DNA of 64,000 nt from Macrostomum lignano (GCA_002269645.1 NIVC01000926.1:248001-312000), one strand, 5' to 3'. Positions 4,201 to 64,000 are shown, numbered from the stretch's first letter. A program made the numbers and translations. The notes: a model not told the origin generated them from the sequence alone.

Positions 4201-4670
4201 CAAAAACCAAATTACCTACCTATTGCATTAGTCAATTGCTCTGGTGGAACTTGCGACAGTTTTGCCATAAGGCGTTGTTGGCATTCTTCTAAAGTTGCCT
4301 GATGTAGGCGCACCTTTTTGATTGGTGGCAGATAATCAACACCAGTGGCTGCATCTAGTTCTATTACTTCAGATGCACCATCTTGGCACTGGATAGTAGC
4401 AGTAGCAGCAGGTTTATTAGAATTAGAATTAGAACAAGAAAGAAAACCATCTTCAGAGTTTCGCAAACTTTCCATATTCTGACGCTCATTTTCAAGCTCT
4501 GGATGCTGAGACTTGATATGAGCTATCATACCACTATTTGTAGATTTTGCTGCAATAGTGCCTCTCGAGATTACTTTTTTACATGATTTGCATGTTGCAG
4601 AAAGTCGATCCTCGGAGATAGTAAAAAAAACATGGATGGATGACTTCGTGCGAGAGAGTCGAAAAGCCAT
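1232..4670 (-). CDS. hAT-superfamily transposase (BED zinc finger + DDE + hAT dimerisation domain), 6 exons, one apparent 1-nt frameshift
   Basis: Exons (minus): 4670-4220, 3921-3476, 3294-3019, 2800-2636, 2389-2018, 1718-1232, all GT-AG. Motifs: BED finger (CKSC...H...H), TSDEWS, VTDEGS, CAIH, TRWDS, LKWW...YPRLAALARRYLCITPSSADSERLFS. Exon 5 is 372 nt where phase requires 371. Confidence 0.88.
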
Positions 4671-13798: not shown

Positions 13799-16700
13799 AT
13801 GTCTAATGAAGACCCAGTTGGTCAAGGCCACGAAGACAAAGAGCTGACAGAGATGCCACCATCGCCAACAATGACTTCATCCGCCACTACGCTAAATGGC
13901 TCAATTCATGAGCAAGAGGAGCCAGACAACTCAATACAGGCTAGGAACGGTTCAATAATAATCGACCAACATCAGCAATTATCGGCGCACGAACTGCAGG
14001 ACGCTTTAAATCGGGTTCGAACTCTATCCAGCTGTCCTAGCGTCAGTTCGTGCGGCACAGCTCCTGAGGAGATCTTGTCAATAATGCCACAGCCAGACGA
14101 GGAGCAAGACGTTGACAGAGCCGATGATGTTGATGACGCAGATGATGGCGCGCGTGATGAAACTGGGCCCAAACTGTTGCCTGCTGATTCTCTGCTACCG
14201 GGAGAGCGGTACCGCTGCTCTGGCTTGGACTCAACTAGCCTGTTGATTGTGCTCACTAATTATCGATTGTTGTTGCTACGCCAACCGCCTGCTGATGTTG
14301 AATCTGCAGCATCCATATCGGGACGGATGGAGCCGGCTGAATTGCGTCTAATTGAATCTTTGCCAGTGTTTTTAATTGAACGACTGCAGGCTTTGGATGG
14401 ATTGCAGTTGCAACTGCATTGTAAGGTAGTGACTCAATATCTATGATTTATTTATTCATATTTACAAGTATTTTCCATTGGTTATCCATATTTCTATTTG
14501 GTCTATTTATGTACCCATGTCTCTACCCCTTTTACCCATGTCACTACCCACTCTACCCATGTCTCTACCCCTTTTACCCATGTCTCTACGCTCTCTACCC
14601 ATGTCACTACCCACTCTACCCATGTCACTACCCCCTCTGTCCATGTCTACACCCCTCTACCCATGTCTCTACCCCCTCTGCCCATGCCTCTACCCCCTCT
14701 ACCCATGCCTCTACCCCCTCTACCCATGTCACTACCCTCTCTGCCCATGTCTCTACCCCCTCTGCCCATGCCTCTACCCCCTCTACCCATGCCTCTACCC
14801 ACTCTACCCATGTCACTACCCCCTTTGCCCATGTCTCTACGCTCTCTGCCCATGTCACTACCCCCTCTGTCCATGTCTACACCCCTCTACCCATGTCTCT
14901 ACCCCCTCTGCCCATGCCTCTACCCCCTCTACCCATGCCTCTACCCCCTCTACCCATGTCACTACCCTCTCTGCCCATGTCTCTACCCCCTCTACCCATG
15001 TAACTACCCCCTCTACCCATGCCTCTACCCCCTCTACCCATGTCACTACCCTCTCTGCCCATGTCTCTACCCCTCTACCCATGTAACTACCCCCTCTACC
15101 CATGCCTCTACCCCTCTACCCATGCCTCTACCCCCTCTACCCATGCCTCTACCCCTCTGCCCATGCCTCTACCCCTCTACCCATGTCTCTACACCCTCTG
15201 CCCATGTCTCTACACCCTCTGCCCATGTCTACTACCCTCTGCCCTTGCCCATACTGACTCTACCCTTGCTCACCCACTCACTCACTCTCATGTCTATCCC
15301 TTACTCGGACCTCTGTTCCTCTCTCGACCCCATAATGCTACACAGGCTTTTTATATATCCATTTTAAATCCATTTAATACGGGAAACCTCAACGCTCTAT
15401 TAAACTCCTTAGGACGGGCGCTGCAACCTGCCCCGACTGTACTTCGACTCCCTCCCCGAGCTCAACCAGTGGGCCGAACGACTCGATCCGACCCGATTGA
15501 GTCCTCTTTTGGACTGCCAGGGCGCCACCTACTTTCCCTACCTATTCAAAAAGACGATCCGAAGGCGGCAGCAGCAGCAGCAGCCCGATGCTGAGCCTGT
15601 TGACATGGGCTACGAGGCGCACTACACTGAGAAATCTTTTATAGATGAAGCTAAACGACTCGGCTTCCTGGGCGATAATAGTGGCTGGTGCGTTACTAAA
15701 CTCAACTCCGACAGGTCTTTGTGCCAGTCCTATCCTAGGCTGCATCTGCTTCCGGCCTCCGTTACGGAAGACGAATTGCGCCAGTCTAGCGGCTACCGAG
15801 CTCTGGGTAGATTTCCGGCGCCAGTTTGGCGCTGCCGGGCTAATGGCGCCGTTTTGGCGCGCTCGGCCCAACCGCTAGTTGGATTGGCTGGATTTCTCGG
15901 CTGGCGTTGCGAACCCGACGAGAAATTGGTGCGAATGCTGACTTCCGATGCCGCTAAAAAGGTTTGTGCCAGCGATTGCTATTTTGTATTAGCTGAGCTG
16001 CCGTTTTCTATTAGCTGAGTTGCCGTTTCCTATTAGCTGAGTTGCCGTTTTCTATTAGCTGAGTTGCCGTTTCCTATTAGCTGAGTTGTTATTTTGTATT
16101 AGCTGAGTTGCCGTTTTGTATTAGCTGAGTTTCTATTTCGTATTAGCTGAGTTGCCGTTTTCTATTAGCTGAGTTGCCATTTTTTCTATTAGCTTATTTG
16201 CAATTTTCTATTAGCTGAGTTGCCATTTTCTATTAGCTGAGTTGCCATTTTCTATTAGCTGAGTTGCCATTTTTGCTTTAGCTGAGTTGCCATTTTCTAT
16301 TAGCTGAGTTGCCATTTTTGCTTTAGCTGAGTTGCCATTTTCTATTAGCTGAGTTGCCGCTTTCTATTAGCTGAGTTGCCATTTTCTAATAGCTGAGTTG
16401 CCATTTTCTAATAGCTGAGTTGCCATTTTCTATTAGCTACGTTGCGAATTTATAAATGGTGATTAAACACAGTCAGAGTTGAATAAGCAAGAAAACATAC
16501 ACTGACCCGAATTACCTAATCCAGGTGCTAATAGTGGACGCCAGGCATTACACTGCCGCGCTTGGCAATGGCACCCGAGGCGGCGGCTACGAACGGCCCG
16601 AATATTATACGGGCACAGAGATCGAATACCTGGGCCTGCCCAATATCCACGCTATTAGGAATAGTTTTGTCGCCCTGCGAGCCGCTTTAGGTGCTGCCTG

Positions 16701-19700
16701 TTGCGGTCGCGATGGCTCCTTAGCCTCTGTGGCCTCGAATTCGTTTTCTTCTAATAGCTCTGCTAGTGCTACTACTGTTACTCATAGTAGTTATGCTAGC
16801 GGTAATAATGGATCTGCCTCAACTGTGGCGACCGCGACAACAGAAGCGTTGCAAGCCTCATCCGCAACATCTGTGAGTAATAATTCTACTGTATCTCTGG
16901 CGCCTGGGCCTGTCGCTACAGTTTGTACGGCGCCGCCAACGTCAACTACTTCGTCTGGTGTCAGCTCCGCCGCTGCTGCCGCCGCCGCGGCCGCCGCAGC
17001 CGCTCAGAATGCGAGCTTCTTAAGCGACATCGAACGGGCCGGCTGGCTGACTTTGCTGAGCTCGTTGATTAGGCATTCTAGTAGAATCGCTCAGGTAATG
17101 GAAATGTTTTAAACTTGTCTTAACTAACCACAGGCATCTTTGCTTAACTTTCATAGCACAGCTGTGCTGCTCTGATTTAATATGTTAACTGGTAGAATGT
17201 CCTATTTATTTTTAGTTAGAGTCTCTGTGGCGCCAAAATGAGCGCCTGTCTGTGGCGCCAAAATGAGCGCCTGTATGTGGCGCCAAAATGAGTGCCTGTC
17301 TGTGGCGCCAAAATGAGCGCCTCTATGTGGCGCCAAAATGAGTGCCTGTCTGTGGCGCCAAAATGAGTGTCTGTCTGTCACAGCCTGTGGCGCCAAAATG
17401 AGCGCCTATCTGTGGCACCAAAATGAGCGCCTGTCTGTCACAGCCTGTGGCGCCAAAATGAGCGCCTATCTGTGGCGCCAAAATGAGCGCCTGCCTGTGG
17501 CGCCAAAAGCCCCAGCTTTTGGGTGTGGGCACAGTCCCACACTCACACAGGGGTGTATATACAGGAATATGAGATAGGGGATAAGTGCACCCAGGGGTTG
17601 AATAGATTAATGACTGGAAATCTTCGCCCCCCCCCGTTAGGGAGGCAGAAAAAGAATCTGTTGGAGTCTGTTAACCACACAGACACAGTAGAGTACAGCA
17701 ACCCTTACTTTATTTATCGTTAGGCATTTACCAAAATACCAATTTAACACCAAATGAATGCGACTGCACTTGGAATCGAGCCTGGGCCGCTGGCACATCA
17801 GAACGCCTGGGTAGACCACTGGGCTTTGGCCCCCTTTTAGAATATCGTATACTGATAATAATATTGATTGATTACTCGCACCAATTGGCCCGAATTGGGC
17901 CAGATGTGCAACCGACAGCGGCTATTGCATCTGAAGGTTGCGTACGGCTGTTCAGTCCAAGGACTGGGGGGTCGCCACACACCCTCAGTTACCCCAGCTA
18001 ATGCCGGCACCCATTTTACAGCTGGCTGAACTGAAGCAATGCAGAGTTGAGTGTCTTGCTCAAGGACACAAATTGTTTCAAGTGGGATCGGGAATCGAAT
18101 CCCCGACCTTCAAGTCATGAGTCCTACAACCTCCTTTACCCCTTTACTATCATATACTATATTATATTCTCATTGCTGTGGCTATTTGCGCACTGCGTGC
18201 ATTAGGGTCGCGATTATAATAGTCAGTGTTGTTGTACACCCCGTGTGAGCTAATCAAGGTTGCTGTACACCCCATGTGAGCTAGTGCGTGCTGGCTTCTT
18301 CGCTCGCTGCGCTTGCATTGTAGCCTTGATTCACCGGCTCAAATCCTCAGGTGCTGGTGTCCGAGGGTCGCTCGGTGCTGGTGCACTGCTCAGACGGTTG
18401 GGATCGGACCCCGCAGCTCACCAGCCTGTGCCAGGTCATAGCGGATCCCTACTACCGCAGCATCGCCGGTTTCCGCCTGCTGATCAATCGGGAATGGTTC
18501 GAATTCGGGCACAAGTTCGCCGACCGTTGTTCCGGTCGGGACGCGAACGAGCGGTCTCCAATATTTCTGCAGTTTTTAGATTGCGTGCATCAATTATTAT
18601 TACAATATCCTACTCAGTTTGAGTTCACCGACGCGTTGCTAAGGCGATTAGCGGTGCACTGTTACTCCGGCTTGTTTATTAGCTTCCTTAGCAACGGACC
18701 GGCCGAACGAGACGCTGCAGATTTAAAAAGTCGTGGCCTGTGCGTTTGGAATATATTAAAACTGGCCGGTATGAAGAATGAGCTTTACCAGCCCAGTCAT
18801 CGAGTCCTCACCCCGTCAGCCGCTATTCACAGTTTGCAACTCTGGAGAGCACTGTATGCCCCGCCTGGTCAACCTGGTAGCTTTGATCGGCTTGATTGGG
18901 ATGGTCTACCGCTCGCTTGCGATCCCTTTCAGGTGAGTGCGCGTGCTTGTTGCTGTACTGGGCCTAGTCTCTGATAGATGTGGTTTAGACTTTAGTGAGT
19001 TCGGTTTATGGTGTCTAATAGTGCTGGTTTATGACCTCTAATAGGGCAGGGTTATGACCTCTAATAGGGCTGGTTTGTGATCTCTAAAAAGGACTGGTTT
19101 TTTATCTCTAATAGGACTGGTTTATGATCTCTAATAGGTCTGTTTATGATCTCTAATAGGGCAGGTTTGTGATCTCTAATAGGGCAGGTTTATGATCTCT
19201 AATAGGGCTGGTTTATGATCTCTAATAGGGCTGGTTTATGATCTCTAATAGGTCTGTTTATGATCTCTAATAGGGCAGGTTTATGATCTCTAATAGGGCT
19301 GGTTTATGATCTCTAATAGGGCTGGTTTATGATCTCTAATAGGGCTGGTTTATGATCTCTAATAGGGCAGGTTTGTGATCTCTAATAGGGCTGGTTTATG
19401 ATCTCTAATAGGGCAGGTTTATGATCTCTAATAGGGCTGGTTTATGATCTCTAATAGGACTGGTTTATGATCTCTAATAGGTCTGTTTATGACCTCTAAT
19501 AGGGCTGGTTTATGATCTCTAATAGGGCTGGTTTATGATCTCAAATAGGGCAGGTTTATGATCTCTAATAGGGCTGGTTTATGATCTCTAATAGGGCTGG
19601 TTTATGATCTCTAATAGGGCAGGTTTATGATCTCTAATAGGTCTGTTTATGATCTCTAATAGGGCAGGTTTATGATCTCTAATAGGGCTGGTTTATGATC

Positions 19701-22700
19701 TCTAATAGGGCTGGTTTATGATCTCTAATAGGGCTGGTTTATGATCTCTAATAGGGCTGGTTTATGATCTCTAATAGGGCTGGTTTATGATCTCTAATAG
19801 GGCAGGTTTATGATCTCTAATAGGTCTGTTTATAATTTCTAATAGGGCTGGTTTATGATCTCTAATAGGGCTGGTTTATGATCTCTAATAGGGCTGGTTT
19901 ATGATCTCTAATAGGGCAGGTTTATGATCTCTAATAGGGCTGGTTTATGATCTCTAATAGGGCAGGTTTATGATCTCTAATAGGGCTGGTTTATGATCTC
20001 TAATAGGGCTGGTTTATGATCTCTAATAGGGCTGGTTTATGATCTCTAATAGGGCTGGTTTATGATCTCTAATAGGGCTGGTTTATGATCTCTAATAGGT
20101 CTGTTTATAATTTCTAATAGGGCAGGTTTTTTCTAATGGGGTTGGTTTGTGATCTCTAAAAAGGACTGGTTTATGATCTCTAATAGGACTGGTTTATTAT
20201 CTAATTGAGCTGGTTTATTATCTCTAATAGGGCAGGCCTAATAAGTCATCACTATTAAGATTGACCTTAAAGGAAATAGTTTATGTCATTGTGATTTTTT
20301 CTTCATTTCAATCCTACTTTAATTGGGGAACTCGAGTGAGTATTAGTTACTCCATTAGCTACTAGTGAATATAGTGAAATGCGAAAACGCAAACCCTGAC
20401 ATGTTTAGAGGCTGCGGTATTCCGAACATACGCTTCACAGAGTAAAGCTAATTACACCGTGGCTTACGAAGGTATTACCTGCTATAATAGGTACAGTTAC
20501 AATTAGGTTGCTTAATTTCAGCTAGTCGGCCGAGTGAGGAGGTTATAATCTCTTACTAATTAATACAGCAACCCGATAATGCCTCGATCATTATACAAAG
20601 CCACTCAGCATCCTCCCAGTGTGCTCTAGCGATCCACTACTTGCACCCTACCCCCAGTTTAACAATCCGCCCTTTACCCCACTCCTAGTTTAACAATCCG
20701 CCCTCTACCCCTACCCCCAGTTTAACAATCCGCCCTCTACCCCTACCCCCAGTTTAACAATCCGCCCTCTACTCCTACCCCCAGTTTAACAATCCGCCCT
20801 CTACCCCTACCCCCAGTTTAACAATCCGCCCTCTACCCCTACCCCCAGTTTAACAATCCGCCCTCTACCTCTACCCCCAGTTTAACAATCCGCCCTCTAC
20901 CTCTACCCCCAGTTTAACAATCCGCCCTCTACCACTACCCCCAGTTTAACAATCCGCCCTCTACCTCTACCCCCCAGTTTAACAATCCGCCCTCTACCTC
21001 TACCCCCCAGTTTAACAATCCGCCCTCTACCCCTACCCCCAGTTTAACAATCCGCCCTCTACCTCTACCCCCAGTTTAACAATCCGCCCTCTACCTCTAC
21101 CCCCAGTTTAACAATCCGCCCTCTACCCCTACCCCCAGTTTAACAATCCGCCCTCTACCTCTACCCCCAGTTTAACAATCCGCCCTCTACCTCTACCCCC
21201 CAGTTTAACAATCCGCCCTTTACCCCACTCCTAGTTTAACAATCCGCCCTCTACCCCTACCCCCAGTTTAAAAATCCGCCCTCTACCCCTACCCCCAGTT
21301 TAACAATCCGCCCTCTACCCCTACCCCCAGTTTAACAATCCGCCCTCTACCTCTACCCCCCAGTTTAACAATCCGCCCTCTACCTCTACCCCTAGTTTAA
21401 CAATCCGCCCTCTACCCCTACCCCCAGTTTAACAATCCGCCCTCTACCTCTACCCCCCAGTTTAACAATCCGCCCTCTACCTCTATCCCCCAGTTTAACA
21501 ATCCGCCCTTTACCCCACTCCTAGTTTAACAATCCGCCCTCTACCCCTACCCCCAGTTTAACAATCCGCCCTCTACCCCGACCCCCCACCCCAGTTCAAC
21601 AATTCCCCTTCTACCCCTACCCCCAGTTTTACAATCCGCCCTCTACTCCCCCCATACTAGCAATCAGCCATTTTAGATCCACAACCCCTATCTACCTACC
21701 TAAGCCTCTATATTTGGTTGCCAAAGCTGCAGCTTTACTTCTCAGGTGTTTCGTCCTCGTCCGTCATCTCTCTAGGGATTTCGACTGCTTCTATCTTCTG
21801 TGAGCATAAACCACTCTTTTTTAATAGCTGAGCAAGGCAAGGCAAAGCTGGAGACAAAGAGAAACGGATTTGCCAAAGGTGAAAAATTCACACTTTTTGA
21901 GTCTCCAGCTTAGACTGAATGCCGAAGGATTTAGATTAGCGGCTCGTTTAACAGCGACGGCTATTTGAGAGTGAAAAAATAGGATTAGCTCTTACGATTT
22001 TGTTGTAAGAGCGCTTAGAACGATGGTTTTTTATTACCATAAAGTCAATAGTTTGATGAAAAGCTTAAAAAATTGACATTTCCCGTTAGGCTAACGAGGA
22101 ATGGGGTGCGTCATTGGGAAATTGACGTCATTAATTTCGGTCTGTTGTCTTTGTTTGTGGCACTCGGCATGCTTTTAATATTTTATTTAATGCGTGCCCT
22201 AAAGGGGTGAGATTATCCGGTCCGTCACTCAATGTGGTGAGATTATCCAGCCCGTCACTCAATGTGGTGAGATTATCCGCTCTGTCACTCTATAGGGGTG
22301 AGATTATCCACTCTGTCACTCAATGTGGTGAGATTATCCACTCTGTCACTCAATAGGGGTGAGATTATCCACTCTGTCACTCAATGTGGTGAGATTATCC
22401 ACTCTGTCACTCAATGTGGTGAGATTATCCACTCTGTCACTCAATGTGGTGAGATTATCCACTCTGTCACTCAATGTGGTGAGATTATCCACTCTGTCAC
22501 TCAATAGGGGTGAGATTATCCACTCTGTCACTCAATGGGGTGATATTATCCAGTCTGTCACTCGATAAAAGTGGGATTATCCAGTCTGTCACTCGATAGG
22601 GGTGGGATTATCCAACATATATAGGTTAGTTGGAATTGGAATGTGCATAGAAAACGGAAGCTTGGTCAGTGCAGACAGGCCGAACAAAGCCAATATGCTT

Positions 22701-23171
22701 TATGCGCTCAATATGCAGGACCAGTTGCGTCAGCTCAGACGGGAGCTGAGCCAGGCCGAGCGAACCAGACAGTATCTTCAGGAGCGCCTTGATGCTCAAG
22801 CGGCCGCAGCTGCTGAGGGTGAGCAACAGCAGCAGCGACAGTCAGGCGGTCCAGGGAACGCCAGCAGCCGGTGCCGAAGCAGCGCCAGCAGTTCCCTGTC
22901 GGAGCCCAGCATGGAGAGCGCCGAGTTTGTTGACAATTGCGACGAAGGCGGCATTGTCCGCTGGGTGCCGGACCATCTGCGTCACACGTGCGCCAATTGT
23001 CACGCCAGCTTTAATCAATTGTTGCGTCGGCATCACTGCAGAGCCTGTGGCGACGTGTTCTGCTACAGGTGCTGCGATCAGTACATGCCGCTGCCTAACC
23101 AGTTTCTGCACGACAAGTGCAGAGTGTGCCAGCCATGCTTTGCCAGGCATAGCCATGGCGCTGACGCCTGA
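13799..23171 (+). CDS. MTMR3/4: Myotubularin-related phosphoinositide 3-phosphatase with C-terminal FYVE finger (MTMR3/4 type), 5 exons, ~926 aa
   Basis: Exons 13799-14425, 15413-15961, 16525-17094, 18351-18932, 22719-23171, all phase 0 GT-AG. Catalytic VHCSDGWDRT is intact. Also SYP...RALGRFP, VDAR...NG..GGGYE, LDWDGL + coiled coil, and FYVE WVPD...RRHHCRACG...RVC. The exon 5 acceptor is chosen by phase and homology. Confidence 0.93.
14505..15245. repeat. 21-bp minisatellite (ctaccccctctacccatgyct) in MTMR intron 1
   Basis: Direct tandem copies; they explain the 7-aa-periodic spurious ORFs. Confidence 0.95.
15985..16440. repeat. 22-bp minisatellite (tattagctgagttgccattttc) in MTMR intron 2
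   Basis: Period 22 measured at 16209/16231/16253. Confidence 0.95.
17222..17510. repeat. 25-bp minisatellite (gtggcgccaaaatgagcgcctgtct) in MTMR intron 3
   Basis: Period 25 (17227/17252); the core is shared with the array at 28915-29185. Confidence 0.95.
17520..17834 (-). mobile_element. tRNA-derived SINE, family A (second partial copy at about 46290-46480)
   Basis: The minus strand begins GGGGCCAAAGCCCAGTGGTCTA (A-box-like) ... GGCTCGATTCC (B-box-like). Body segments cacactcacacagg.gtgta, actttatttatcgttaggca and gactgcacttggaatcgagcctgggcc recur in the RPL34 intron. Confidence 0.7.
17860..18160 (-). mobile_element. tRNA-derived SINE with CORE-like central domain, family B
   Basis: Minus strand: GGGATTCGATTCC B-box followed by TGTGTCCTTGAGCAAGACACTCAACTCTGCATTGCTTCAGTTCAGCCAGCTGTAAAATGGG (18070-18010), which resembles the MIR/CORE consensus as recalled. 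Confidence 0.7.
19010..20240. repeat. 23-bp minisatellite (ctctaatagggctggtttatgat) in MTMR intron 4
   Basis: About 1.2 kb of homogeneous tandem array. Confidence 0.95.
20650..21640. repeat. 32-bp minisatellite (cccccagtttaacaatccgccctctaccccta) in MTMR intron 4
   Basis: Period 32 (20719/20751). Confidence 0.95.
22205..22615. repeat. 30-bp minisatellite (gagattatccactctgtcactcaatgtggt) in MTMR intron 4
   Basis: Direct tandem copies; 10-aa-periodic spurious ORFs. Confidence 0.95.
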
Positions 23172-23269
23172 CTAACACTGATTGATTTGCCTGCTTGCTC
23201 TGAGTTGCTTGTTAGTCTTGTGCTTGGACTGCGACTGCTTGTTAATATTTATACAGGCTCATTAGTAGG

Positions 23270-23790
23270 ACTGCGGCACTTCAGAAGATGGATTGCGGCA
23301 ATTCAAAGGGGGGATTGCTGCACTTCAAAGGGGGATCGCGGCACTTCAAAAGGGAGATTGTGGCACTTCAAAGGGGGATTGCGGCACTTCAAAGGGGGAT
23401 TGCGGCACTTCAAAGGGGGATTGCGGCTCTTCAAAGGTGGATTGCGGCACTTCAGAGGGGGATTTGCGGCACTTAAAAGGGGGGATTGCGGCACTTCAAA
23501 GAGGGATTGCGGCACTTCAAAGAAGGGAATTGGCGGAACTTCAAAGGGGGGATTGCGGCACTTCAAAGGGGGATTGTGACACTTCAAAGGGGGGATTGCG
23601 GCACTTCAAAGAAGGGTATTGGCGGAACTTCAAAGGGGGGATTGCGGCACTTCAAAGGGGGGATTGCGGCACTTCAAAGGGGGGATTGCGGCACTTCAAG
23701 GGGGGATTGCGGCACTTCAAAAGGGGGAATTGCGCCACTTCAAGAGGGGTTTGCGGAATTTTAAAGGGGCGATTACGGCACTTCAAAATG
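23270..23790. repeat. 21-bp minisatellite (ggggattgcggcacttcaaag) downstream of the MTMR stop (probable 3' UTR)
   Basis: The tandem array starts about 100 bp after the stop; AATAAA occurs at about 24355. Confidence 0.9.
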
Positions 23791-24795
23791 CTCTGAAGGT
23801 TGGCACCTTTTATTAACTAAAGCCACTGTATCGTTGAAGTTGTATAAAAGATTTTTAATAAACCATATATTGTGTGATAATTTTCATTGCATGAATTGGT
23901 CCCGTATAACTTTGTGGCTCAAAATAGTTATGCTATCTAATTACTGTCAGAACCGATGTAATTTTCTTGTGTCTACTGATTTCTTTATATTCATTTTTTG
24001 CATGCAAACGGTTAGCTTGTCAACTAAATATAATTATTTATAATTATTACTGTATTTAATACATGTTAAAACCAATCTTATATCGTAATGATTTACAATT
24101 AAGTTTTGTATATAAGTAAAGTACATTAGATACTTGCTTATCTCGCTATTGTATAACTAGTTTTAACAAGCTTTTTATTTTCAGAGTTTATTCTAGATTT
24201 CATCTATTTTTGTTTGTTTTATTTTCTTATTTATTAAACAAATTGTCCCCTAAAGGGTTAATTGTTATGCATAATTTCTCTCATTATCTTATTAATTCTG
24301 TGTGGGCTCGTCATTACCTATTGCGAGCCCGTGTGCTTTTTGTTTGCCAAGATCAATAAATTAATAAGTATTAGAAAATACTTATAATTTACTTTAATAC
24401 TGGCTCTTGGCTTATCTCATTTAGTTTGCGGTTTTGACAACTAATTATGCAGATAGATTTAAACTGAATATACATTTCTTGATCAATCAGAATCAGCAAG
24501 AATCTTAGAAAGCTAAATATAAGAATACTACTATGTGCGATAAAAATTGGAACTCTGAGATCTTCAGAGCCGGAAAGTACATGATGTTAAAGTATAGGGC
24601 GGAATTTAGGGATTTTAGACGATTATAAAGTAGCTTAATAGGGATGTGACGAGGTGAGAAGTAGTCGTTGCTGAGAATGTATAATTTTTATTTACGCTCG
24701 TAATTGAAAGCTGTTTTACAATCGAAAGGGGCAGGCTTCTGTAGTATTAAACGCATAATATAATGAAGGAATCTCATGAAGGGCCTTTAGTCTAG

Positions 24796-24835
24796 CATGT
24801 ACTCGTAATAGATTGAGTCTTCGCAGTAGAGACCG
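24796..24835 (-). ncRNA. Spliced-leader (SL)-like sequence; candidate SL RNA gene variant or SL-derived relic
   Basis: The minus strand reads CGGTCTCTACTGCGAAGACTCAATCTATTACGAGTACATG. This closely matches the Macrostomum lignano SL as I recall it (CGGTCTCTTACTGCGAAGACTCAATTTATTGCATG); the recalled sequence is not verified here. Confidence 0.55.
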
Positions 24836-25149
24836 TAGCGTGTGATTGGTCAGAGAGAAGAGAGCAGAGCAGACGGAAACAAAGAGACAATAATCACGCT
24901 TCAAAATAATTCACTTTTGAGATACAATTAAACCAAACTTAAGTACTGATTAGATTAGATATGAATAGATCAGGTTAATTAATTAATATTACATTAAACA
25001 ATCACAAATGTCAATGTTACGCTCGAATAATCCATAAAGTATCGGACAGACAGAATGCGACACCGTCACAGGGATAAAATAAGTGGAAATTCATATTGAC
25101 TCGAAATTTTAAGCAGCGAAGTGTTTTTAATAATAAAAATAGATTATTA

Positions 25150-25330
25150 TTAAAAGAATAATATACATTCATGCATTCCACTGACTTTGGTGTGCACAAG
25201 CAGCCGTACACTCGCTCGCACAGGGGTGTACAGCGACCTTCACTGCCTTGATGATTGGAATTGTATGACAACCCGGCCATTGCTATGGCCAGCTAGTTTT
25301 CGGAACACAAAACCCATTAATTAATGACGG
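25150..25330 (-). ncRNA. Unidentified structured RNA candidate (3-4 hairpins)
   Basis: Stems ctggccat/atggccgg, gggttgt/acaattcc and gctgtacac/gtgtacggc need G-U pairs that work only on the minus strand. The element ends near a T-run, and a GGTTCGATTCC B-box lies upstream at 25351-25361. Confidence 0.4.
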
Positions 25331-25504: not shown

Positions 25505-27272
25505 CTAAATAAACTCCAATCTGCTAATGAGATCTGATGGACCGATCAAATTCGATTGACGGCGAACTCTCGTCAGCTGCACAAGCTGCAGCTGCTGCCG
25601 CTGGTGCTGCCTCACTCGGAGGCTGGGATTGGCCAGGATGTAGATGAAGCAGTTCGCCGCCGAGTCCAGGCCGGTCATCACGTTGGCCGCCACCATCAGG
25701 CAGTCGCTCGGACCGGCTGGCAAGACGCCCAGAGCCGCGTCCAACTTGGACAGGAAGGTGGGCAGCTCCAGCAGGCAGAACACTGCGGACAGGGCCGCTA
25801 CGGTCCGGTTCACTCTCGACCTTAAAGCTGCAGTGGTTGGTCTGCGCCTGAGCAGGGCGAGGCAGCTGGCGGCTGAGAACAGCAGCACCAGGGCTACCGG
25901 ACCGCCAGACTGGGCCAGGAACATTGCGGCCGCCAGGTAAGCAGCTCTGTAGGCTGGGCTGGCCAGCAGGGGCGACGCCAGCTGATCAGTGATGGCGCCT
26001 GCCGATGACTGGGGAGGGAGAGAGACTGACTCACTGACTGACTCACTGACTCACTGACTCACTGACTGACTCACTGACTCACTGACTGACTCACTGACTG
26101 ACTCACTGACTGACTCACTGACTGACTGACTCACTGACCCACTGACTGACTCACTGACTCACTGACTCACTCACTGACTCACTCACTGACTGACTCACTG
26201 ACTGACTCACTCACTGACTGACTCACTGACTGACTCACTGACTGACTGACTCACTGACTCACTGACTGACTCACTAACTGACTCACTGACTGACTCACTG
26301 ACTGACTGACTCACTGACTCACTGACTCACTGACTGACTCACTGACTGACTGACTCACTGACTCACTGACTCACTGACTGACTCACTGACTGACTGACTG
26401 ACTCACTGACTGACTGACTCACTGACTGACTCACTGACTGACTGACTCACTGACTGACTCACTAACTGACTCACTGACTCACTAACTGACTCACTGACTG
26501 ACTCACTGACTCACTAACTCACTGACTGACTCACTGACTGACTCACTGACTGACTCACTGACTCACTGACTGACTCACTGACTCACTGACTGACTCACTG
26601 ACTCACTGACTGACAAGCTCTCACCAGCTGCTGGCCATCCGGGCAGTACACGTACAGATGCTCGAATGCTCGCGGCAAAGCCAGGCAGAATGCCAGGCAG
26701 GCGGCAGCCGGGAACACCGGCCAGGTCAGCCGTCGCCTCCAGGCTGGGAACTGCGTGTGCGGCGACGCCACGGCGGCCAGACGCAGGCCGGCGATGAACA
26801 CCACCGTCCAGTTGCGCAGGCACTGGCAGCCGACCAGGGCCGGCACGCTGGCAGCCATCAGGCCGGTGGCCAGGCCGGCCGCAGTCGCTGACACGCTCGG
26901 CGCCCTGGCTGGCGCCATCAGTAGCGCGCTGAGTAAGAAATGGCTGAGCAGCGCCGCGTTGAAGCCGATCTCGCAGGCCGCCAGCCGGACCAGCAGGCGC
27001 AGGGTCGCCCGAAGTCCCGGCTGGCGGCGCCACATCGCCGAATCGCGGCTCAACCGACGCTGGCAGAGGTACAGGCCGCAGCTGTTCACCATCAGGTTGA
27101 TGCTGGCTAGGCCGGTCATGAACCCGCTGTACATGAGCGGGTTGAGCATCGCCGAGCTCCCTGTTGGAGTTGTCTCGTTCGTTAATCGGCTTGAATTTGA
27201 ATCGCCTTGGTCTGATCGACAATTTGTCGTGGTGGAATTGCCTACCAGCATTGCCCAGTGCCAGGTGGTCAT
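25505..27272 (-). CDS. Rhodopsin-class (class A) orphan GPCR, FMRFamide/Srw-like peptide-receptor type, 2 exons, ~383 aa
   Basis: Exons 27272-26625 and 26008-25505 (phase 0). Seven hydrophobic segments; TM3 RNWTVVFIAGLRLAAVASP, TM6 FCLLELP, TM7 DSAANCFIY. Confidence 0.85.
26025..26612. repeat. (ACTG/ACTC)n tetranucleotide microsatellite filling the GPCR intron
   Basis: tgactcac/tgactgac tandem for about 590 bp of a 616-bp intron. Confidence 0.95.
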
Positions 27273-28785: not shown

Positions 28786-29259
28786 CAGGCGTCGCCGGTT
28801 GGCGCCCCCCGGTGGCGCCGCGTCGCCACCGGGGGGGACAGGGGGGGGGACATGCCAATGCTTTGTCCCCCCCACCCCACGTTGTGAGTCGTTGTGGTAA
28901 TTAATAGTATTTCTTCAGGGCGCCAAAATATAGCGCCTTCGGCGCCAAAATGAGTGCTTGCGGCGCTAAAAAGAATGCCTGCGGCGCTAAAATGAGTGCC
29001 TGCGGCGCTAAAATGAGTGCCTGCGGCGCTAAAATGATTGCCTGCGGCGCTAAAATGAGTGCCTGCGGCGCTAAAAAGAATGCCTGCGGCGCTAAAATGA
29101 GTGCCTGCGGCGCTAAAATGAGTGCCTGCGGCGCTAAAATGATTGCCTGCGGCGCTAAAATGATTGCCTGCGGCGCCAAAATGAGTGTCAAAAATTAGTC
29201 ATGTACATGTTGAATTCTTGGCTTTGTCCCCCACCATAAAATTCATGGCAATGCCCCTA
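28786..29259. mobile_element. hAT-like MITE carrying a 21-bp minisatellite (gcggcgctaaaatgagtgcct)
   Basis: Ends CAGGCGTCGCC / GGCAATGCCCCTA, a decayed inverted repeat; ggggggacaggggggggac and ctttgtccccc subterminal motifs; tandem array 28915-29185. No TSD resolved. Confidence 0.55.
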
Positions 29260-41500: not shown

Positions 41501-42422
41501 TTGCTTGTTCTCCCCTATTCCAAGTTCAATTTTCATTGTTTTTTGCCAAACCCTGCTTCTAGTATTACTGTGAGTAGAATGACAATATTTTTCTCATAGG
41601 CCCTTAGATGAGCAAATCAACATGTTTAAGGTGCCAATTTAGCTATTTAGCTAAAAAGTGTTAAAACTATGTGCATATACTTTCAATAGGGGCAGCTTAC
41701 AATAGTTTAAAGTTCATTGAAACATAGTCAAGCAACATTATTTTATGATATAAAAACAAAAACATAGAATATATAGGTAACTTGTTTAGTAGTTAAATTT
41801 TCTTTAAATAAAACACATATCAATTTATATACATTTATATTTCTTCACCACTTTAGTTATAAAAATCATGTACAAAAAACCCTAGAACAAAGTTACATAC
41901 AAAGCCATAAACCCTTCTGCAAACTTAAAATTCTGCCCATAACTTTTCTCAGGCAGATGGTATTGCTATAAAAATCTATTCTTCAATAAAGAAAATAGGT
42001 AAAATTTAAACTAATTTAATTAATATTGCTGGCTATAATAAACAAAGTCAAAAAACTTTGCAGAGTTTTGCAGAATAGTTACAAACAGTTTTAACTATTT
42101 GTTGTGTTATTTAGCTATTTGGCTGTCAGCTATTTTTTGGGTACCTTAATCTCATTAATCTCATTACCTTAATCTCATTTTATAGCTTTTATGTTTAAAC
42201 TGTCTATGAGGCAGAGTTGATACATTTAAAATATGCCAAATACCCTAAGTTAAATTATTCACATAGCCATAGTTATTTGGTAAATTGTTTAGCTATTCTT
42301 ACAATATAATGAGGACTTGACTCCCAAATAAAAATGTGGACTGCTGTGTGTGCTCAGCTCACCCAGTTGGCAAAATTATTGATGACTACTTGCCTCGTTT
42401 TCTGCAGTGCCAGGCATTCTAC

Positions 42423-44855
42423 ATGTCTGACAACAACAATTCAGAGCTTCAGTCTGACGAACTGACAGCACTGGCTAGTATCTATGAGGATGAGATCACC
42501 GAGTTCAATGCCAAGTCTGGCTCATTTGCCATCACTATAAGAGGCAGCAGCAGTGACTGCGACGGGAAGGCATCGCCAACTGTCACGCTGTCCGTGACTT
42601 TCCCGCCTTCGTATCCAACCGAATGTCCGCCAGTGTTTGAACTGTCCGCTCCTTGGCTTCGCGGTGAATCGAGGAGATTATTAGAGAATCGGCTTGTTGC
42701 AGTCTGCCAAGACTTTGCCGGCTGCCCGGTTGTTTACGCTTGGGCTGAAGCTGTGAGACAGTTTATTGATGAACATGCTAGTGCTCAGTGCGACTCTGCC
42801 GCTGCAGATGATCAGGGTGAGAAATATGAATCAAAATTATATCTTACAGTGTTAGTATGATTTCTCTGCTTGGCTTAGAGCCCTCTAAGATTCCCAGTTG
42901 CTGGGCCAGCCTCCCAGAGTGACAGTTGCTGGGCCAGCCTCCCAGAGTGTCAGTTGCTGGGCCAGCCTCCCAGAGTGTCAGTTGCTGGGCCAGCCTCCCA
43001 GAGTGTCAGTTGCTGGCCAGCCTCCCAGAGTGTCAGTTGCTGGGCCAGCCTCCCAGAGTGTCAGTTGCTGGGCCAGCCTCCCAGATGTCAGTTGCTGGGC
43101 CAGCCTCCCAGAGTGTCAGTTGCTGGGCCAGCCTCCCAGAGTGTCAGTTGCTGGGCCAGCTTCCTAGATTCTCAGTTGCTGGGCCAGCCTCCCAGATCCT
43201 CAGTTACTGGGCCAGCCTCCCATATCCCCAGTTGCTGTGCCATCTTCCCAGAATCTCAGGTTGTATTTCATATGTATTCAAACTGCTAATGATATGTCCC
43301 TTTGCCACCGCAGACTCCCACAGTTCTGCATCAAGTCAGCCAACCGCAGCAGTCCCGGCAGCGCTGTCCCCAGAGTCTGCCGCAGCCGCTGAAACTGCAG
43401 AATTTGTCCATGGCGAGCCCATAGAAGACCGACGCAGCGTATTCCAGGCGCACCTGTTGGCCCCAGTTCATAGCGTCCAGCTGGCTAGCAACGCATTGGC
43501 GCAGTTGCTCTCCAGTGAAAAGAAGATCGCCTCTGCTACGCACAATATCTGGGCCTATCGGATTGTCAGACAGAGTCAGACTGGACAACAACAAGGTTTG
43601 TGCCATTGGTCGGTAGCGTCAGGGTTGCAATGCCATTTGGCATCCTGACTTGTGACCCACAGAAGTTGCAGAAGTCTGCAACTGGAAAGTAGAAGTAATA
43701 GAATTCTGAAAACCCCAATAGTTCAAAGAATTACCTGGGTACCGATTTGACATCCGAGAACAATATGCCAAAATATTAACTTCATGTATCATGACTAACG
43801 AAATGACAAACTGAAACCTATATAATGTCCAGTTTTCATAAAAATGTCTTCAAAAATTTCCCCATTATAAGGTTAAGTGTTGTCTTTTTTAGTGTGGAGT
43901 TTGGCTTAAGTTGGGTTTAGGTTAGGGTTGGGTTTAGGTTAGGGTTGGGTTTAGGTTAGGGTTGGGTTTAGGTTAGGGTTGAGTTTAGGTTAGGGTTGGG
44001 TTTAGGTTAGGGTTTTGTTTAGGTTAGGTTAGGGTTGGGTTTAGGTTAGGGTTGGGTTTTGGTTAGGGTTGGGTTTAGGTTAGGGTTGGGTTTTGGTTAG
44101 GGTTGGGTTTAGGTTAGGTTAGGGTTGAGTTTAGGTTAGGGTTGGGTTTAGGTTAGGTTAGGGTTGAGTTTAGGTTAGGGTTGGGTTTAGGTTAGGGTTG
44201 GGTTTAGGTTAGGGTTGGGTTTAGGTTAGGGTTGGGTTTAGGTTAGGGTTGGGTTTAGGTTAGGGTTGGGTTTAGGTTAGGGTTACGATTCGAAAACGTG
44301 CAAACTGCTATGCCAACAATCGAGACGTCCATTTAGCATCGCGAATAAATGTGTGAATGTTCAGGGGTCATTTTAAAAGTTAAAACGTTTATGCCTATGC
44401 TTTTCCCTTGAAATTCTAGTAGAAAATATCTTACAATTTCTAATCATCTACAAATATGTAGATCATTGCTCTTTCAAAATTCAGAGTAAAGATGCTGAAA
44501 TGTACTTTTAGAATGTAGAAGAAAGCAACAATTTCGCCAGGATGCGCCCAGCCCCCTGCCTCAGTGGGTGTCAATAAATGAAATCTTTCAAAAGCCGCCT
44601 ATCTTCCGCACGTGACTTGCAGGCGTCTCATTTTACACCGACTGCGACGATGACGGCGAGCAGCAGGCCGGCGGCCGGCTTCTCCGCCTGCTGGAGCTGT
44701 CGGACACCCGCAACGCTCTGGTTGTGGTGTCCCGCTGGTTTGGCGGCACCCTGCTGGGCCCGGACAGGTTCAAGCATATTAACAATGCGGCTAGGAACTT
44801 GCTGGAACAGCGAGGCGTTATTGAAACGCGTGGTGCTAAGCGGAATAAGAATTGA
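42423..44855 (+). CDS. IMPACT: Protein IMPACT (RWD domain + UPF0029 ancient domain), 3 exons, ~302 aa
   Basis: Exons 42423-42816, 43314-43595, 44623-44855 (phase 1). QSDELTALASIY and FPPSYPTECPP (RWD); DRRSVFQAH, ATHNIWAYRI, DCDDDGE..AGGRLL, VVVSRWFGGTLLGPDRFKHINN. Confidence 0.95.
42893..43230. repeat. 28-bp minisatellite (cagttgctgggccagcctcccagagtgt) in IMPACT intron 1
   Basis: Tandem array; the same family recurs at 45090-45540. Confidence 0.95.
43905..44284 (+). repeat. Telomere-like 17-bp repeat (ggtttaggttagggttg) in IMPACT intron 2
   Basis: Period 17 (TTAGGG at 43922 and 43939); each unit contains TTAGGG. Confidence 0.95.
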
Positions 44856-45089
44856 TAGATTTTTTCCTGTCTACTTGAAATATTAACTAAATTATGTTTT
44901 CTGGTGCAAGTTTATATTTTAATTGATAACTAGAATTTTCTGCATTTATGTGGTTCCATACTGTTGCTTTGTAGAGATCTTGATAATTTTTAAGCATAGA
45001 TAGACTTTGATTTTATTGAGGCTGAGGATTGTAAAGCTTCGTTGCGTTAATTTTCTTCTTTTTCTAGGAATATGTTTAGTGCTAATAGC

Positions 45090-45540
45090 CAGCCTCCCAA
45101 ATCCTCAGTTTCTGGGCCAGCCTCCCAGATCCTCAGTTGCTGGGCCAGCCTCCCAGATCCTCAGTTGCTGGGCCAGCCTCCCAGATCCTCAGTTGCTGGG
45201 CCAGCCTCCCAGATCCTCAGTTGCTGGGCCACCATCCCAGATCCTCGGTTGTTGGGCCAGCCTCCTAGATCCTCAGTTGCTAGGCCAGCCTCCCAGATCC
45301 TCAGTTGCTGGGCCAGCCTCCCAGATCCTCGGTTGCTGGGCCAGCCTCCTAGATCCTCAGTTGCTGGGCCAGCCTCCCAGATCCTCAGTTGCTGGGCCAC
45401 CATCCAGATCCTCGGTTGTGGGCCAGCCTCCCAGATCCTCAGTTGCTGGGCCAGCCTCCCAGATCCTCAGTTGCTGGGCCAGCCTCCCAGATCCTCAGTT
45501 GCTGGGCCAGCCTCCCAGATCCTCAGTTGCTGGGCCAGCA
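45090..45540. repeat. 28-bp minisatellite (cagttgctgggccagcctcccagatcct) between IMPACT and RPL34
   Basis: 24 of 28 positions are identical to the IMPACT intron 1 unit. Confidence 0.95.
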
Positions 45541-45623
45541 TCACAGATTCCAGTCTCACCAGTTCCACCTCGCGCTACCCCGCAGCCACAGCGGCACCGC
45601 CAGCCGTCAGCCCTATCTAGAAG

Positions 45624-63840: not shown

Positions 63841-64000
63841 CAATATGAACACCAATTTAAATATCAATATATCAATATATCATATATATCATATTATATA
63901 TTTTAATATTATTACATTATATACATACATGCGCAACCTCCAAAATTCGGTCGGCCATGCGACTTAGTTTAAAAAAAAATGCGACATAGTTTTTGGCCAA

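What the first reader, a model, noticed from the sequence alone, without database searches (positions are those of the whole stretch)
24690..24900. Spliced-leader-like locus with a non-canonical 3' end
The minus strand 24835-24796 matches the recalled Macrostomum SL almost base for base over the first ~30 nt. Flatworm SLs end in AUG followed by a GU donor. Here the sequence reads ...TATTACGA|GTACATG|CT: the only GT comes 7 nt before the end of the ATG, and the ATG is followed by CT. Options are a divergent SL isoform that donates a leader without AUG (a possible SL2-like, operon-resolving leader), this species' own SL, an SL pseudogene, or a retrocopy of a trans-spliced mRNA 5' end. It is unique, non-repetitive DNA between two convergent genes, and a candidate operon lies 18 kb away.
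Basis: partly seen in the sequence, partly recalled or inferred. Interest (0 to 1): 0.78.

Follow-up and report, generated by a model that had tools for sequence, protein, structure and literature searches.

The report
Dead fragment of flatworm spliced leader
This is a real but broken, isolated copy of the Macrostomum spliced-leader sequence sitting in intergenic DNA; it lacks everything a working spliced-leader RNA gene needs, so it is an ordinary genomic relic rather than a new kind of leader.

Summary
The minus strand at 24836-24807 matches nt 10-40 of the published 45-nt Macrostomum spliced leader (SL): 31 aligned positions with 1 deletion and 1 substitution, E about 1e-5, and one copy in the window. 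The interesting reading, a working AUG-less, SL2-like leader gene, is not supported.

I recovered a genuine Macrostomum-type SL RNA gene from a metagenome contig (L005) and compared the two:
- The window copy lacks the first 9 SL nucleotides.
- Its SL 3' end is rearranged (ATT-ACGAGTA-CATG).
- CT, not the GTAAG donor, follows the ATG.
- It has no Sm-like site.
- It folds no better than shuffled sequence (z +1.2 and -0.6, against -3.6 and -3.7 for the real gene).
- It scores 6 bits against a model on which the real gene scores 143.

Repeat families shared with M. lignano place the window in Macrostomum. The canonical SL is identical in three published species and two environmental samples, so this is not the species' own SL.

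Verdict: a dead SL-derived relic (about 0.8). Its origin is unresolved:
- A cDNA-derived SL + 5'UTR fragment of a trans-spliced mRNA, about 0.45. The 21 nt after the ATG match an SL-GAPDH mRNA 5' end 15/21.
- An SL RNA gene copy with deletions, about 0.35.

Low interest.

The parts
24807..24836 (-). Core of the relic: ACGGTCTC-TACTGCGAAGACTCAATCTATT, homologous to nt 10-40 of the 45-nt Macrostomum spliced leader
   Evidence: 31 aligned positions, 93.5% identity (1 deletion, 1 substitution). E = 7e-6 against the 45-mer and 2e-5 against the L005 gene. It is the only hit in the window.
24796..24806 (-). Rearranged SL 3' end: ACGAGTACATG where the canonical SL has GCATG. It reads as G>A plus a 6-nt insertion before CATG, or as ATTGCATG mutated to ATTACGAG. 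It contains the only nearby GT (24802-24801).
   Evidence: Direct reading and GT scan. The alignment beyond nt 40 is not significant on its own.
24775..24795 (-). The 21 nt after the ATG: CTAGACTAAAGGCCCTTCATG. This is not the GTAAGAC... intron. It matches the 18-nt 5'UTR plus start ATG of an environmental SL-trans-spliced GAPDH mRNA (L004) at 15/21 in the same register.
   Evidence: The other four SL-mRNAs give 5-6/21. Random window 21-mers reach 15/21 or more in 11 of 200,000 trials. The canonical intron in the same register gives 8/21 (my count).
24768..24786 (-). AGGCCCTTCATGAGATTCC: a possible remnant of SL RNA hairpin 3 (canonical AGCCCTTTCATGGGCTTCC, 15/19). The stem is broken. This stretch overlaps the previous part, so the two readings compete.
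   Evidence: p is about 0.02-0.08 depending on gap scheme, which is borderline.
24837..24846 (-). The 10 nt upstream (TCACACGCTA), where a real SL would have GCCGTAAAGA. There is no homology, so the 5' edge of the relic is sharp.
   Evidence: The upstream 125-150 nt also shows no similarity to the region upstream of the L005 gene (1573 of 2000 shuffles score as well).
24687..24692 (-). Context: the first AATAAA on the minus strand after the stop of the 7TM-like gene. It overlaps the stop of a 29-codon ORF (24777-24688) that starts at the second ATG.
   Evidence: The element may therefore lie in that gene's 3'UTR or downstream region; this is inference only.
25505..27272 (-). Context: upstream neighbour on the same strand. 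It is a weakly 7TM-receptor-like gene interrupted by a 12/20/28-nt microsatellite (26024-26614). Its stop lies about 670 nt upstream of the relic.
   Evidence: (7TM_GPCR_Srt E = 0.054, below cut-off).
16525..23171 (+). Context: convergent neighbour, an MTMR3/4-like gene. Myotubularin exons are at 16525-17112 and 18351-18974, and the FYVE exon is at 22602-23171. A 22-nt minisatellite follows at 23268-23787.

Best explanation
The locus is a dead fragment of the Macrostomum spliced leader, not an SL RNA gene. It cannot donate a leader.

What is shown:
- It keeps SL nt 10-40 almost intact and, after a small rearrangement, the terminal CATG.
- It has lost the 5' nine nucleotides.
- No GU donor follows the AUG.
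- It has no stem I, no second hairpin and no Sm-like site.

What is inferred (favoured origin): a 5'-truncated piece of cDNA from the 5' end of an SL-trans-spliced mRNA (SL + short 5'UTR + start codon) was inserted or captured in intergenic DNA downstream of a 7TM-like gene, and then decayed. The similarity stops at the exon end and the next 21 nt look like an mRNA 5'UTR, not the SL RNA intron.

Probabilities: dead relic of any origin about 0.8; this specific cDNA route about 0.45.
For: - SL homology is real and confined to the exon: 24836-24807 equals SL nt 10-40, E about 1e-5.
- A genuine genomic SL RNA gene from a Macrostomum relative serves as comparator (L005:615-723). It has the 45-nt exon, the ATG|GTAAG junction, three hairpins and AGUAUUUUUAG between hairpins 2 and 3. 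It folds at z = -3.57 overall and -3.72 for stem I.
- The window copy folds at z = +1.22 overall and -0.58 for stem I, with 57 of 200 shuffles folding as well.
- No Sm-like motif of three kinds occurs on the minus strand between 24900 and 24400.
- The covariance model of the real gene scores 142.8 bits on L005 and 6.1 bits (E about 9) on the window locus.
- Uneven conservation: the exon core is 94% identical, while the 5' ten nucleotides and the promoter region are unrelated. This does not fit uniform decay of a whole gene copy.
- The 21 nt after the ATG match the 5'UTR+ATG of the SL-GAPDH mRNA L004 at 15/21 in fixed register, empirical p = 5.5e-5.
- Five environmental mRNAs confirm that the canonical junction is ...TTGCATG|body.
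- Precedent: M. lignano has a genomically encoded SL at the 5' end of a protein-coding gene, once mistaken for the SL RNA gene (PMC8629364).
Against: - No poly(A) tract and no target-site duplication of 7 nt or more. No inverted or tandem repeats around the element beyond short AT-rich matches that look like chance.
- No GAPDH or other coding similarity follows the 21 nt.
- The five M. lignano GAPDH loci have unrelated 5' flanks, although the window's genome looks M. lignano-like.
- I noticed the 15/21 match after the fact, not as a planned test.
- Normal retrocopies keep the 3' end of the mRNA, not only the 5' end.
- The stretch AGGCCCTTCATGAGATTCC resembles SL RNA hairpin 3 (15/19, p about 0.02-0.08), which favours the gene-copy rival.
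- Reading CATG as the SL end requires a 6-nt insertion.
Confidence: 0.45

Rival explanations
1. The verdict is the same (dead relic) but the origin differs. On this reading the locus is a DNA-level copy of an SL RNA gene (an SL RNA pseudogene). It lost its 5' end, mutated the donor (GTAAGAC to CTA-GAC), and suffered an internal deletion of about 34 nt that removed hairpin 2 and the Sm-like site. A broken hairpin 3 remains.
For: - A hairpin-3-like stretch, 15/19 identical, lies at a collinear position (24786-24768), p about 0.02-0.08.
- CATGCT-AGAC resembles CATGGTAAGAC.
- SL RNA pseudogenes lacking the GU donor are reported in parasitic flatworms (PMC12582326).
Against: - The tail similarity is not significant: 14-22% of random sequences score as well.
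- It needs several independent lesions within about 110 nt while 31 nt stay 94% intact.
- There is no similarity in the 5' ten nucleotides or the promoter region.
- The covariance model sees only positions 19-48.
- It leaves the 15/21 mRNA-UTR match to chance (5.5e-5).
Confidence: 0.35
2. The locus is a functional, divergent SL RNA gene. It would be transcribed and would donate a roughly 33-nt AUG-less leader from the GA|GUACAU site.
For: - The exon core is better conserved than its flanks. That pattern is also expected of a working paralogue.
- The GU at 24802-24801 sits in the 3' strand of a weak predicted hairpin.
- AUG-less SL variants exist in two trematodes (PMC12582326).
Against: - No Sm-like site within 400 nt.
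- Folding is no better than shuffles.
- 6.1 bits on the SL RNA model.
- It lacks the 5' nine nucleotides present on all Macrostomum leaders.
- GUACA is not the GTAAG donor.
- Only a single SL has been found in M. lignano transcriptomes (PMC8629364, PMC12582326).
- All six metagenome hits to a pattern that allowed this variant carried the canonical form.
Confidence: 0.04
3. The locus is this species' own normal SL. On this reading the window comes from a macrostomid whose SL differs from the published one.
For: - The species is not identified.
- Window proteins found no Macrostomum hit in the protein database, although M. lignano proteins are in it.
Against: - The window shares at least five repeat or minisatellite families, at 84-95% identity, with only 96 kb of M. 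lignano DNA.
- The SL is identical in three Macrostomum species and two environmental samples.
- Even as a species-specific SL, the locus lacks a donor, an Sm-like site and structure.
Confidence: 0.03
4. The SL-like stretch is part of the 3'UTR, or of a small downstream transcript (29-codon ORF 24777-24688 ending in AATAAA), of the neighbouring minus-strand gene, and has been co-opted for some role.
For: - It lies on the same strand as the 7TM-like gene, 670 nt downstream of its stop.
- The first AATAAA after that stop is at 24692.
Against: - There is no evidence of transcription.
- The ORF has no Pfam match (one search covers the overlapping 62-aa ORF).
- No conservation data are available.
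- This would not change the origin of the element as a relic.
Confidence: 0.05
5. The resemblance to the SL is chance.
For: None.
Against: E = 7e-6 to 2e-5 in the window, and 0 of 100 shuffles give a match.
Confidence: 0.005

Closest known systems
Macrostomum SL RNA gene (109 bp, eight copies in M. lignano; Ustyantsev & Berezikov 2021, PMC8629364). Represented here by L005:615-723.
   Same: It shares SL exon nt 10-40 (29 identical, 1 substitution, 1 deletion) and possibly the terminal CATG.
   Different: The window locus lacks exon nt 1-9, the AUG|GUAAG junction, stem I, hairpin 2, the Sm-like AGUAUUUUUAG and an intact hairpin 3. It scores 6 bits against 143 bits for the real gene, and its upstream region is unrelated.
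SL RNA pseudogenes of parasitic flatworms (loci without a GU donor and with negligible trans-splicing; PMC12582326)
   Same: An SL-like exon with a destroyed donor site, judged non-functional.
   Different: Those loci were recognised by whole-gene similarity to SL RNAs. Here only the exon core is demonstrably homologous.
Relict spliced leaders of retroposed genes (dinoflagellate DinoSL retrogenes, PMC6050394 and PMC5585692) and the genomically encoded SL at the 5' end of M. lignano gene Mlig013257.g1 (PMC8629364)
   Same: An SL exon encoded in the genome and followed directly by mRNA-like rather than intron sequence. The exon is 5'-truncated, as relict SLs often are (my own knowledge).
   Different: No recognisable gene body, poly(A) tract or target-site duplication follows here. 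Only about 21 nt of UTR-like sequence can be argued for.
Nematode SL2-type leaders (operon-resolving SL RNA paralogues; PMC7668243)
   Same: Only the idea: a second leader with a divergent 3' end.
   Different: SL2 RNAs are complete snRNP-forming genes with a donor and an Sm site. This locus has neither.

Membership tests
Functional flatworm/Macrostomum SL RNA gene | Complete SL exon (45 nt, starting GCCGUAAAGA...) | tested here: not met
   Homology starts at nt 10. The upstream 10 nt, TCACACGCTA, are unrelated.
Functional flatworm/Macrostomum SL RNA gene | Exon ends in AUG immediately followed by a GU donor (GTAAG in Macrostomum) | tested here: not met
   The ATG at 24798-24796 is followed by CT. 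The only GT is 4 nt upstream of the ATG, in the context GUACA. The canonical junction was confirmed in L005 and in five mRNAs.
Functional flatworm/Macrostomum SL RNA gene | Stem-loop I pairing the exon with the donor region; about three hairpins overall | tested here: not met
   Window: z = +1.22 (136 nt) and -0.58 (56 nt). L005: z = -3.57 and -3.72.
Functional flatworm/Macrostomum SL RNA gene | Sm-like site between two 3' hairpins | tested here: not met
   No RAU3-6GR, TVTTTGG or AT4-6AG motif on the minus strand between 24900 and 24400. L005 has AGUAUUUUUAG between hairpins 2 and 3.
Functional flatworm/Macrostomum SL RNA gene | Match to a sequence+structure model of a real gene | tested here: not met
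   Model R1 scores 142.8 bits on L005 and 6.1 bits (E about 9, model positions 19-48 only) on the window. Caveat: the model was built from a single sequence.
Functional flatworm/Macrostomum SL RNA gene | snRNA-type promoter upstream | tested here: inconclusive
   There is no similarity to the 150 nt upstream of the L005 gene. However, the Macrostomum promoter element is not defined and L005 comes from another species.
Functional flatworm/Macrostomum SL RNA gene | The leader is found trans-spliced onto mRNAs; the RNA is TMG-capped and Sm-bound | not testable with these tools
   No RNA data are available for this species. As an indirect result, the six metagenome hits to a pattern that permitted the variant were all canonical.
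SL RNA pseudogene (decayed gene copy) | Homology to both the exon and the intron part of the SL RNA | tested here: inconclusive
   The exon is homologous (E about 1e-5). For the intron there is only a 15/19 hairpin-3-like stretch, p about 0.02-0.08. The donor-region similarity is not significant.
Processed (cDNA-derived) copy of a trans-spliced mRNA / relict SL | The SL exon is followed at the exon boundary by mRNA sequence, not intron | tested here: inconclusive
   15/21 match to the 5'UTR+ATG of the SL-GAPDH mRNA L004 in fixed register, p = 5.5e-5, found after the fact. The intron gives 8/21 in the same register. The M. lignano GAPDH 5' flanks are unrelated.
Processed (cDNA-derived) copy of a trans-spliced mRNA / relict SL | Intron-less gene body, poly(A) tract, target-site duplication | tested here: not met
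   No coding similarity to GAPDH, and no ORF longer than 62 aa. There is no A-run after the AATAAA at 24692 and no direct repeat of 7 nt or more across the element.

The most novel reading that the evidence does not exclude
The locus is a transcribed, divergent SL RNA paralogue. It would donate an AUG-less leader of about 33 nt (...CUCAAUCUAUUACGA|GUACAU) without a recognisable Sm site. That would make it the first second-class leader in Macrostomorpha, possibly specialised for a subset of genes or for operon-internal genes.
Probability: 0.04. Interest if true: 0.65.

Novelty: new member of a known kind. Interest (0 to 1): 0.15.

Why it matters
As a dead relic it matters little. It is one more SL-derived fragment of the kind that can mislead SL RNA gene annotation. 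M. lignano already had one such mis-assignment (PMC8629364).

If the cDNA origin is right, it gives a small piece of evidence that SL-bearing mRNAs are reverse-transcribed into flatworm genomes. Relict SLs could then be used to date or count retroposition there, as is done in dinoflagellates.

A practical by-product is a full genomic Macrostomum-type SL RNA gene recovered from a metagenome contig (L005:615-723). It is a usable reference for exon, donor, hairpins and Sm-like site.

Tried and rejected
- Rfam: no family at gathering threshold in the whole window, and only noise (U8 at 16.6 bits, IS128) around the locus. Rfam also finds nothing in L005, which contains the real SL RNA gene, so it has no usable model for this gene.
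- Orthologous locus via flanking proteins: the FYVE exon gave one 50% hit and the myotubularin exon at best about 50-65%. No Macrostomum orthologue could be fetched, so conservation of the element could not be tested.
- Species identification by proteins failed. Identification by shared repeats with five M. lignano loci succeeded only to genus or near-species level.
- GAPDH retrocopy: tblastn and nucleotide local alignment of GAPDH against 23.0-25.6 kb and against the whole window found nothing beyond the 21-nt junction.
- Extending the SL alignment through CATGCTAGAC against CATGGTAAGAC was not significant.
- An apparently compensatory U/A double deletion in stem I was dropped, because the window hairpin is no better than shuffles.
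- ATTACGAG occurs twice, 97 nt apart (my reading), which could be the target-site duplication of an insertion. The intervening 89 nt have no terminal inverted repeats by eye, and an 8-mer repeat is expected by chance. I judged it coincidental.
- A possible MITE (20-nt inverted repeat, 80% complementary, at 24675-24694 and 25151-25170) has no target-site duplication and is AT-rich. I judged it chance.
- No further SL-like fragments were found in the window or in 96 kb of M. lignano DNA.

Full report
**1. The observation**

The minus strand 24835-24796 reads CGGTCTCTACTGCGAAGACTCAATCTATTACGAGTACATG.

The published M. lignano leader is CGGTCTCTTACTGCGAAGACTCAATTTATTGCATG (PMC8629364). K-mer reconstructions give a longer form:
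- CCGTAAAGA + that sequence in M. lignano (PMC5173321).
- GCCGTAAAGA... in M. cliftonense (45 nt) and CGTAAAGA... in M. hystrix (43 nt) (PMC10468722 Suppl. Table S3).

BLAST of the 45-mer hits the window once, at 24836-24807. That is SL nt 10-40, 31 aligned positions, one deleted T and one T>C, E = 7e-6. A 22-mer allowing three mismatches has one match against 0.00 expected.

The GT is at 24802-24801 and the ATG at 24798-24796 is followed by CT. The interval is unique in the window.

It lies between a + strand MTMR3/4-like gene and a - strand, weakly 7TM-like gene:
- MTMR3/4-like gene: myotubularin exons at 16525-17112 and 18351-18974, FYVE exon at 22602-23171.
- 7TM-like gene: 27272-25505.

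The element is on the same strand as the 7TM-like gene, about 670 nt past its stop.

**2. A real SL RNA gene for comparison**

I scanned metagenome contigs with CTGCGAAGACTCAATYTATTRC, a pattern that admits both the canonical and the window variant. It returned six contigs, all canonical.

Five of them (Ga0316592) carry the leader at the contig end, followed by different mRNA bodies after ...TTGCATG. These are trans-spliced mRNAs. One encodes GAPDH whose best named relative is M. lignano at 87% identity. The donor organism is therefore a Macrostomum relative.

The sixth (L005, Ga0302322_100095745) holds a genomic SL RNA gene at 615-723:
GCCGTAAAGACGGTCTCTTACTGCGAAGACTCAATTTATTGCATG|GTAAGACACCGGTGATCCAATTCTGGATCAGTATTTTTAGCAGCCCTTTCATGGGCTTCC.

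It folds into three hairpins, with the donor paired in stem I and AGUAUUUUUAG between hairpins 2 and 3. The minimum free energy is -33.4 kcal/mol and z = -3.57, with 0 of 200 shuffles as stable. Stem I alone gives z = -3.72. This matches the published description of the 109-bp M. lignano gene.

**3. The window locus against that standard**

- Only ACGGTCTC-TACTGCGAAGACTCAATCTATT aligns significantly.
- The ten nucleotides upstream and the upstream 125-150 nt are unrelated.
- The sequence after the ATG is not GTAAGAC...
- No Sm-like motif of three kinds occurs on the minus strand between 24900 and 24400.
- The putative RNA folds no better than shuffles: z = +1.22 for 136 nt and -0.58 for the stem-I equivalent.
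- A covariance model of the real gene scores 142.8 bits on L005 but 6.1 bits (E about 9, model positions 19-48) on the locus.

Every testable defining feature of a working SL RNA gene therefore fails. Promoter and expression could not be tested.

**4. Whose genome is this?**

Window proteins found no Macrostomum relatives, although M. lignano proteins are in the database.

However, only 96 kb of M. lignano assembly DNA (GCA_002269645.1, loci L007-L011) shares several repeat families with the window:
- The 28-nt minisatellite at 42882-43260 and 45087-45554, mostly 84-93% identical over about 370-470 nt.
- Other families at 28882-29187 (88%), 17856-18124 (84%) and 63924-63981 (95%).

The window is therefore from Macrostomum, either M. 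lignano or a close relative. The leader is identical in three published species and two environmental samples. The window variant is therefore not the species' normal SL.

**5. Origin of the relic**

The conservation is uneven: 94% identity in the exon core and nothing demonstrable on either side. That argues against simple decay of a whole gene copy. Two signals compete.

(a) The 21 nt after the ATG (CTAGACTAAAGGCCCTTCATG) match, in the same register, the 18-nt 5'UTR plus start codon of the environmental SL-GAPDH mRNA L004 (CTACACTAAAGTCGCACTATG).
- The match is 15/21, against 5-6/21 for the other four mRNAs.
- Random window 21-mers reach 15/21 or more in 11 of 200,000 trials.
- This points to a cDNA of a trans-spliced mRNA 5' end.
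- Against it: I found it after the fact, no GAPDH coding similarity follows, M. lignano GAPDH loci have unrelated 5' flanks, and there is no poly(A) tract or target-site duplication.

(b) AGGCCCTTCATGAGATTCC (24786-24768) resembles hairpin 3 of the SL RNA.
- The match is 15/19 at a collinear position, p about 0.02-0.08.
- This points to a gene copy with an internal deletion of about 34 nt and a mutated donor.
- The donor-region resemblance itself is not significant.

The two readings use overlapping nucleotides, so they cannot both be right. I put the cDNA route at about 0.45 and the gene-copy route at about 0.35. Together with other capture routes, 'dead relic' stands at about 0.8.

**6. Comparison with the known, and novelty**

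SL RNA pseudogenes without donors are described in parasitic flatworms (PMC12582326). Genomically encoded relict leaders mark retrogenes in dinoflagellates (PMC6050394, PMC5585692). M. lignano itself has a genomic SL at the 5' end of a coding gene that was once mistaken for the SL RNA gene (PMC8629364).

This locus is a new member of that known kind. The only novel reading left open is a functional AUG-less leader gene that uses GA|GUACAU and lacks an Sm site. I give it about 0.04.

**7. Verdict**

Interest is 0.15.

Noticed in passing
L005:615-723 (metagenome contig Ga0302322_100095745): A complete genomic Macrostomum-type SL RNA gene: 45-nt exon, ATG|GTAAG junction, three hairpins, and the Sm-like AGUAUUUUUAG. 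A partial duplicate of the exon start (CGCCGTAAAC) lies 15 nt upstream. Rfam has no family that detects this gene.
   Followed up: partly
window 41587-41688 (+): The best window hit of the SL RNA covariance model: 16.3 bits, rough E = 0.013. It lies in 29-30% GC DNA and folds into three hairpins (z = -2.1). It has no similarity to the SL exon and no Sm-like site. It is probably a structure-only chance match.
   Followed up: partly
window 24775-24795 (-) vs L004:30-50: The 21 nt after the SL-like ATG match the 5'UTR+ATG of an environmental trans-spliced GAPDH mRNA at 15/21 (p = 5.5e-5). Nothing GAPDH-like follows, and M. lignano GAPDH 5' flanks differ. The 11-mer CTAGACTAAAG also recurs at window 38135-38125 (-).
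   Followed up: partly
window 16525-23171 (+): The MTMR3/4-like gene (myotubularin + FYVE) found no Macrostomum protein in the database; the best hits were about 50-65% identical. M. lignano proteins are present there, and the window shares repeats with M. lignano. Either the gene is unannotated in M. lignano or the window is from a related species.
   Followed up: partly
window 42838-43315 and 45021-45610; also 28882-29187, 17856-18124, 63924-63981: Minisatellite and dispersed repeat families shared with M. lignano assembly loci L007-L011 at 84-95% identity. The large 'ORFs' at 42926-43648 and 45007-45627 lie inside the 28-nt minisatellite. They should not be read as genes when judging any 'operon' there.
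   Followed up: partly
window 26024-26614: A 12/20/28-nt microsatellite (GACTGACTCACT, about 50 copies) splits the 7TM-like gene between its N-terminal ORF (27272-26595) and its C-terminal ORF (25924-25505). It is either an intron or a repeat-expanded loop; I could not tell which.
   Followed up: no
window 1232-4670 (-): Remnant of a hAT-family transposase: a BED zinc finger at 4212-4670 and the hAT dimerisation domain at 1232-1651.
   Followed up: no
window 54463-58105 (+): The gag-pol region of a Ty3/gypsy-type LTR retroelement: zinc knuckle/protease, RT, RNase H and integrase. It is split over at least four overlapping ORFs in different frames, so it is frameshifted.
   Followed up: no
window 42336-42860 (+) and 48458-48895 (+): An RWD-domain ORF and a glycosyltransferase-90 fragment lie on the same strand about 18-24 kb from the finding. 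I did not evaluate it.
   Followed up: no
window 24803-24810 and 24706-24713 (-): The 8-mer ATTACGAG occurs twice, 97 nt apart. The first copy sits exactly where SL homology breaks. After the second copy comes CGTAAAT, which is donor-like. I judged this coincidental.
   Followed up: partly
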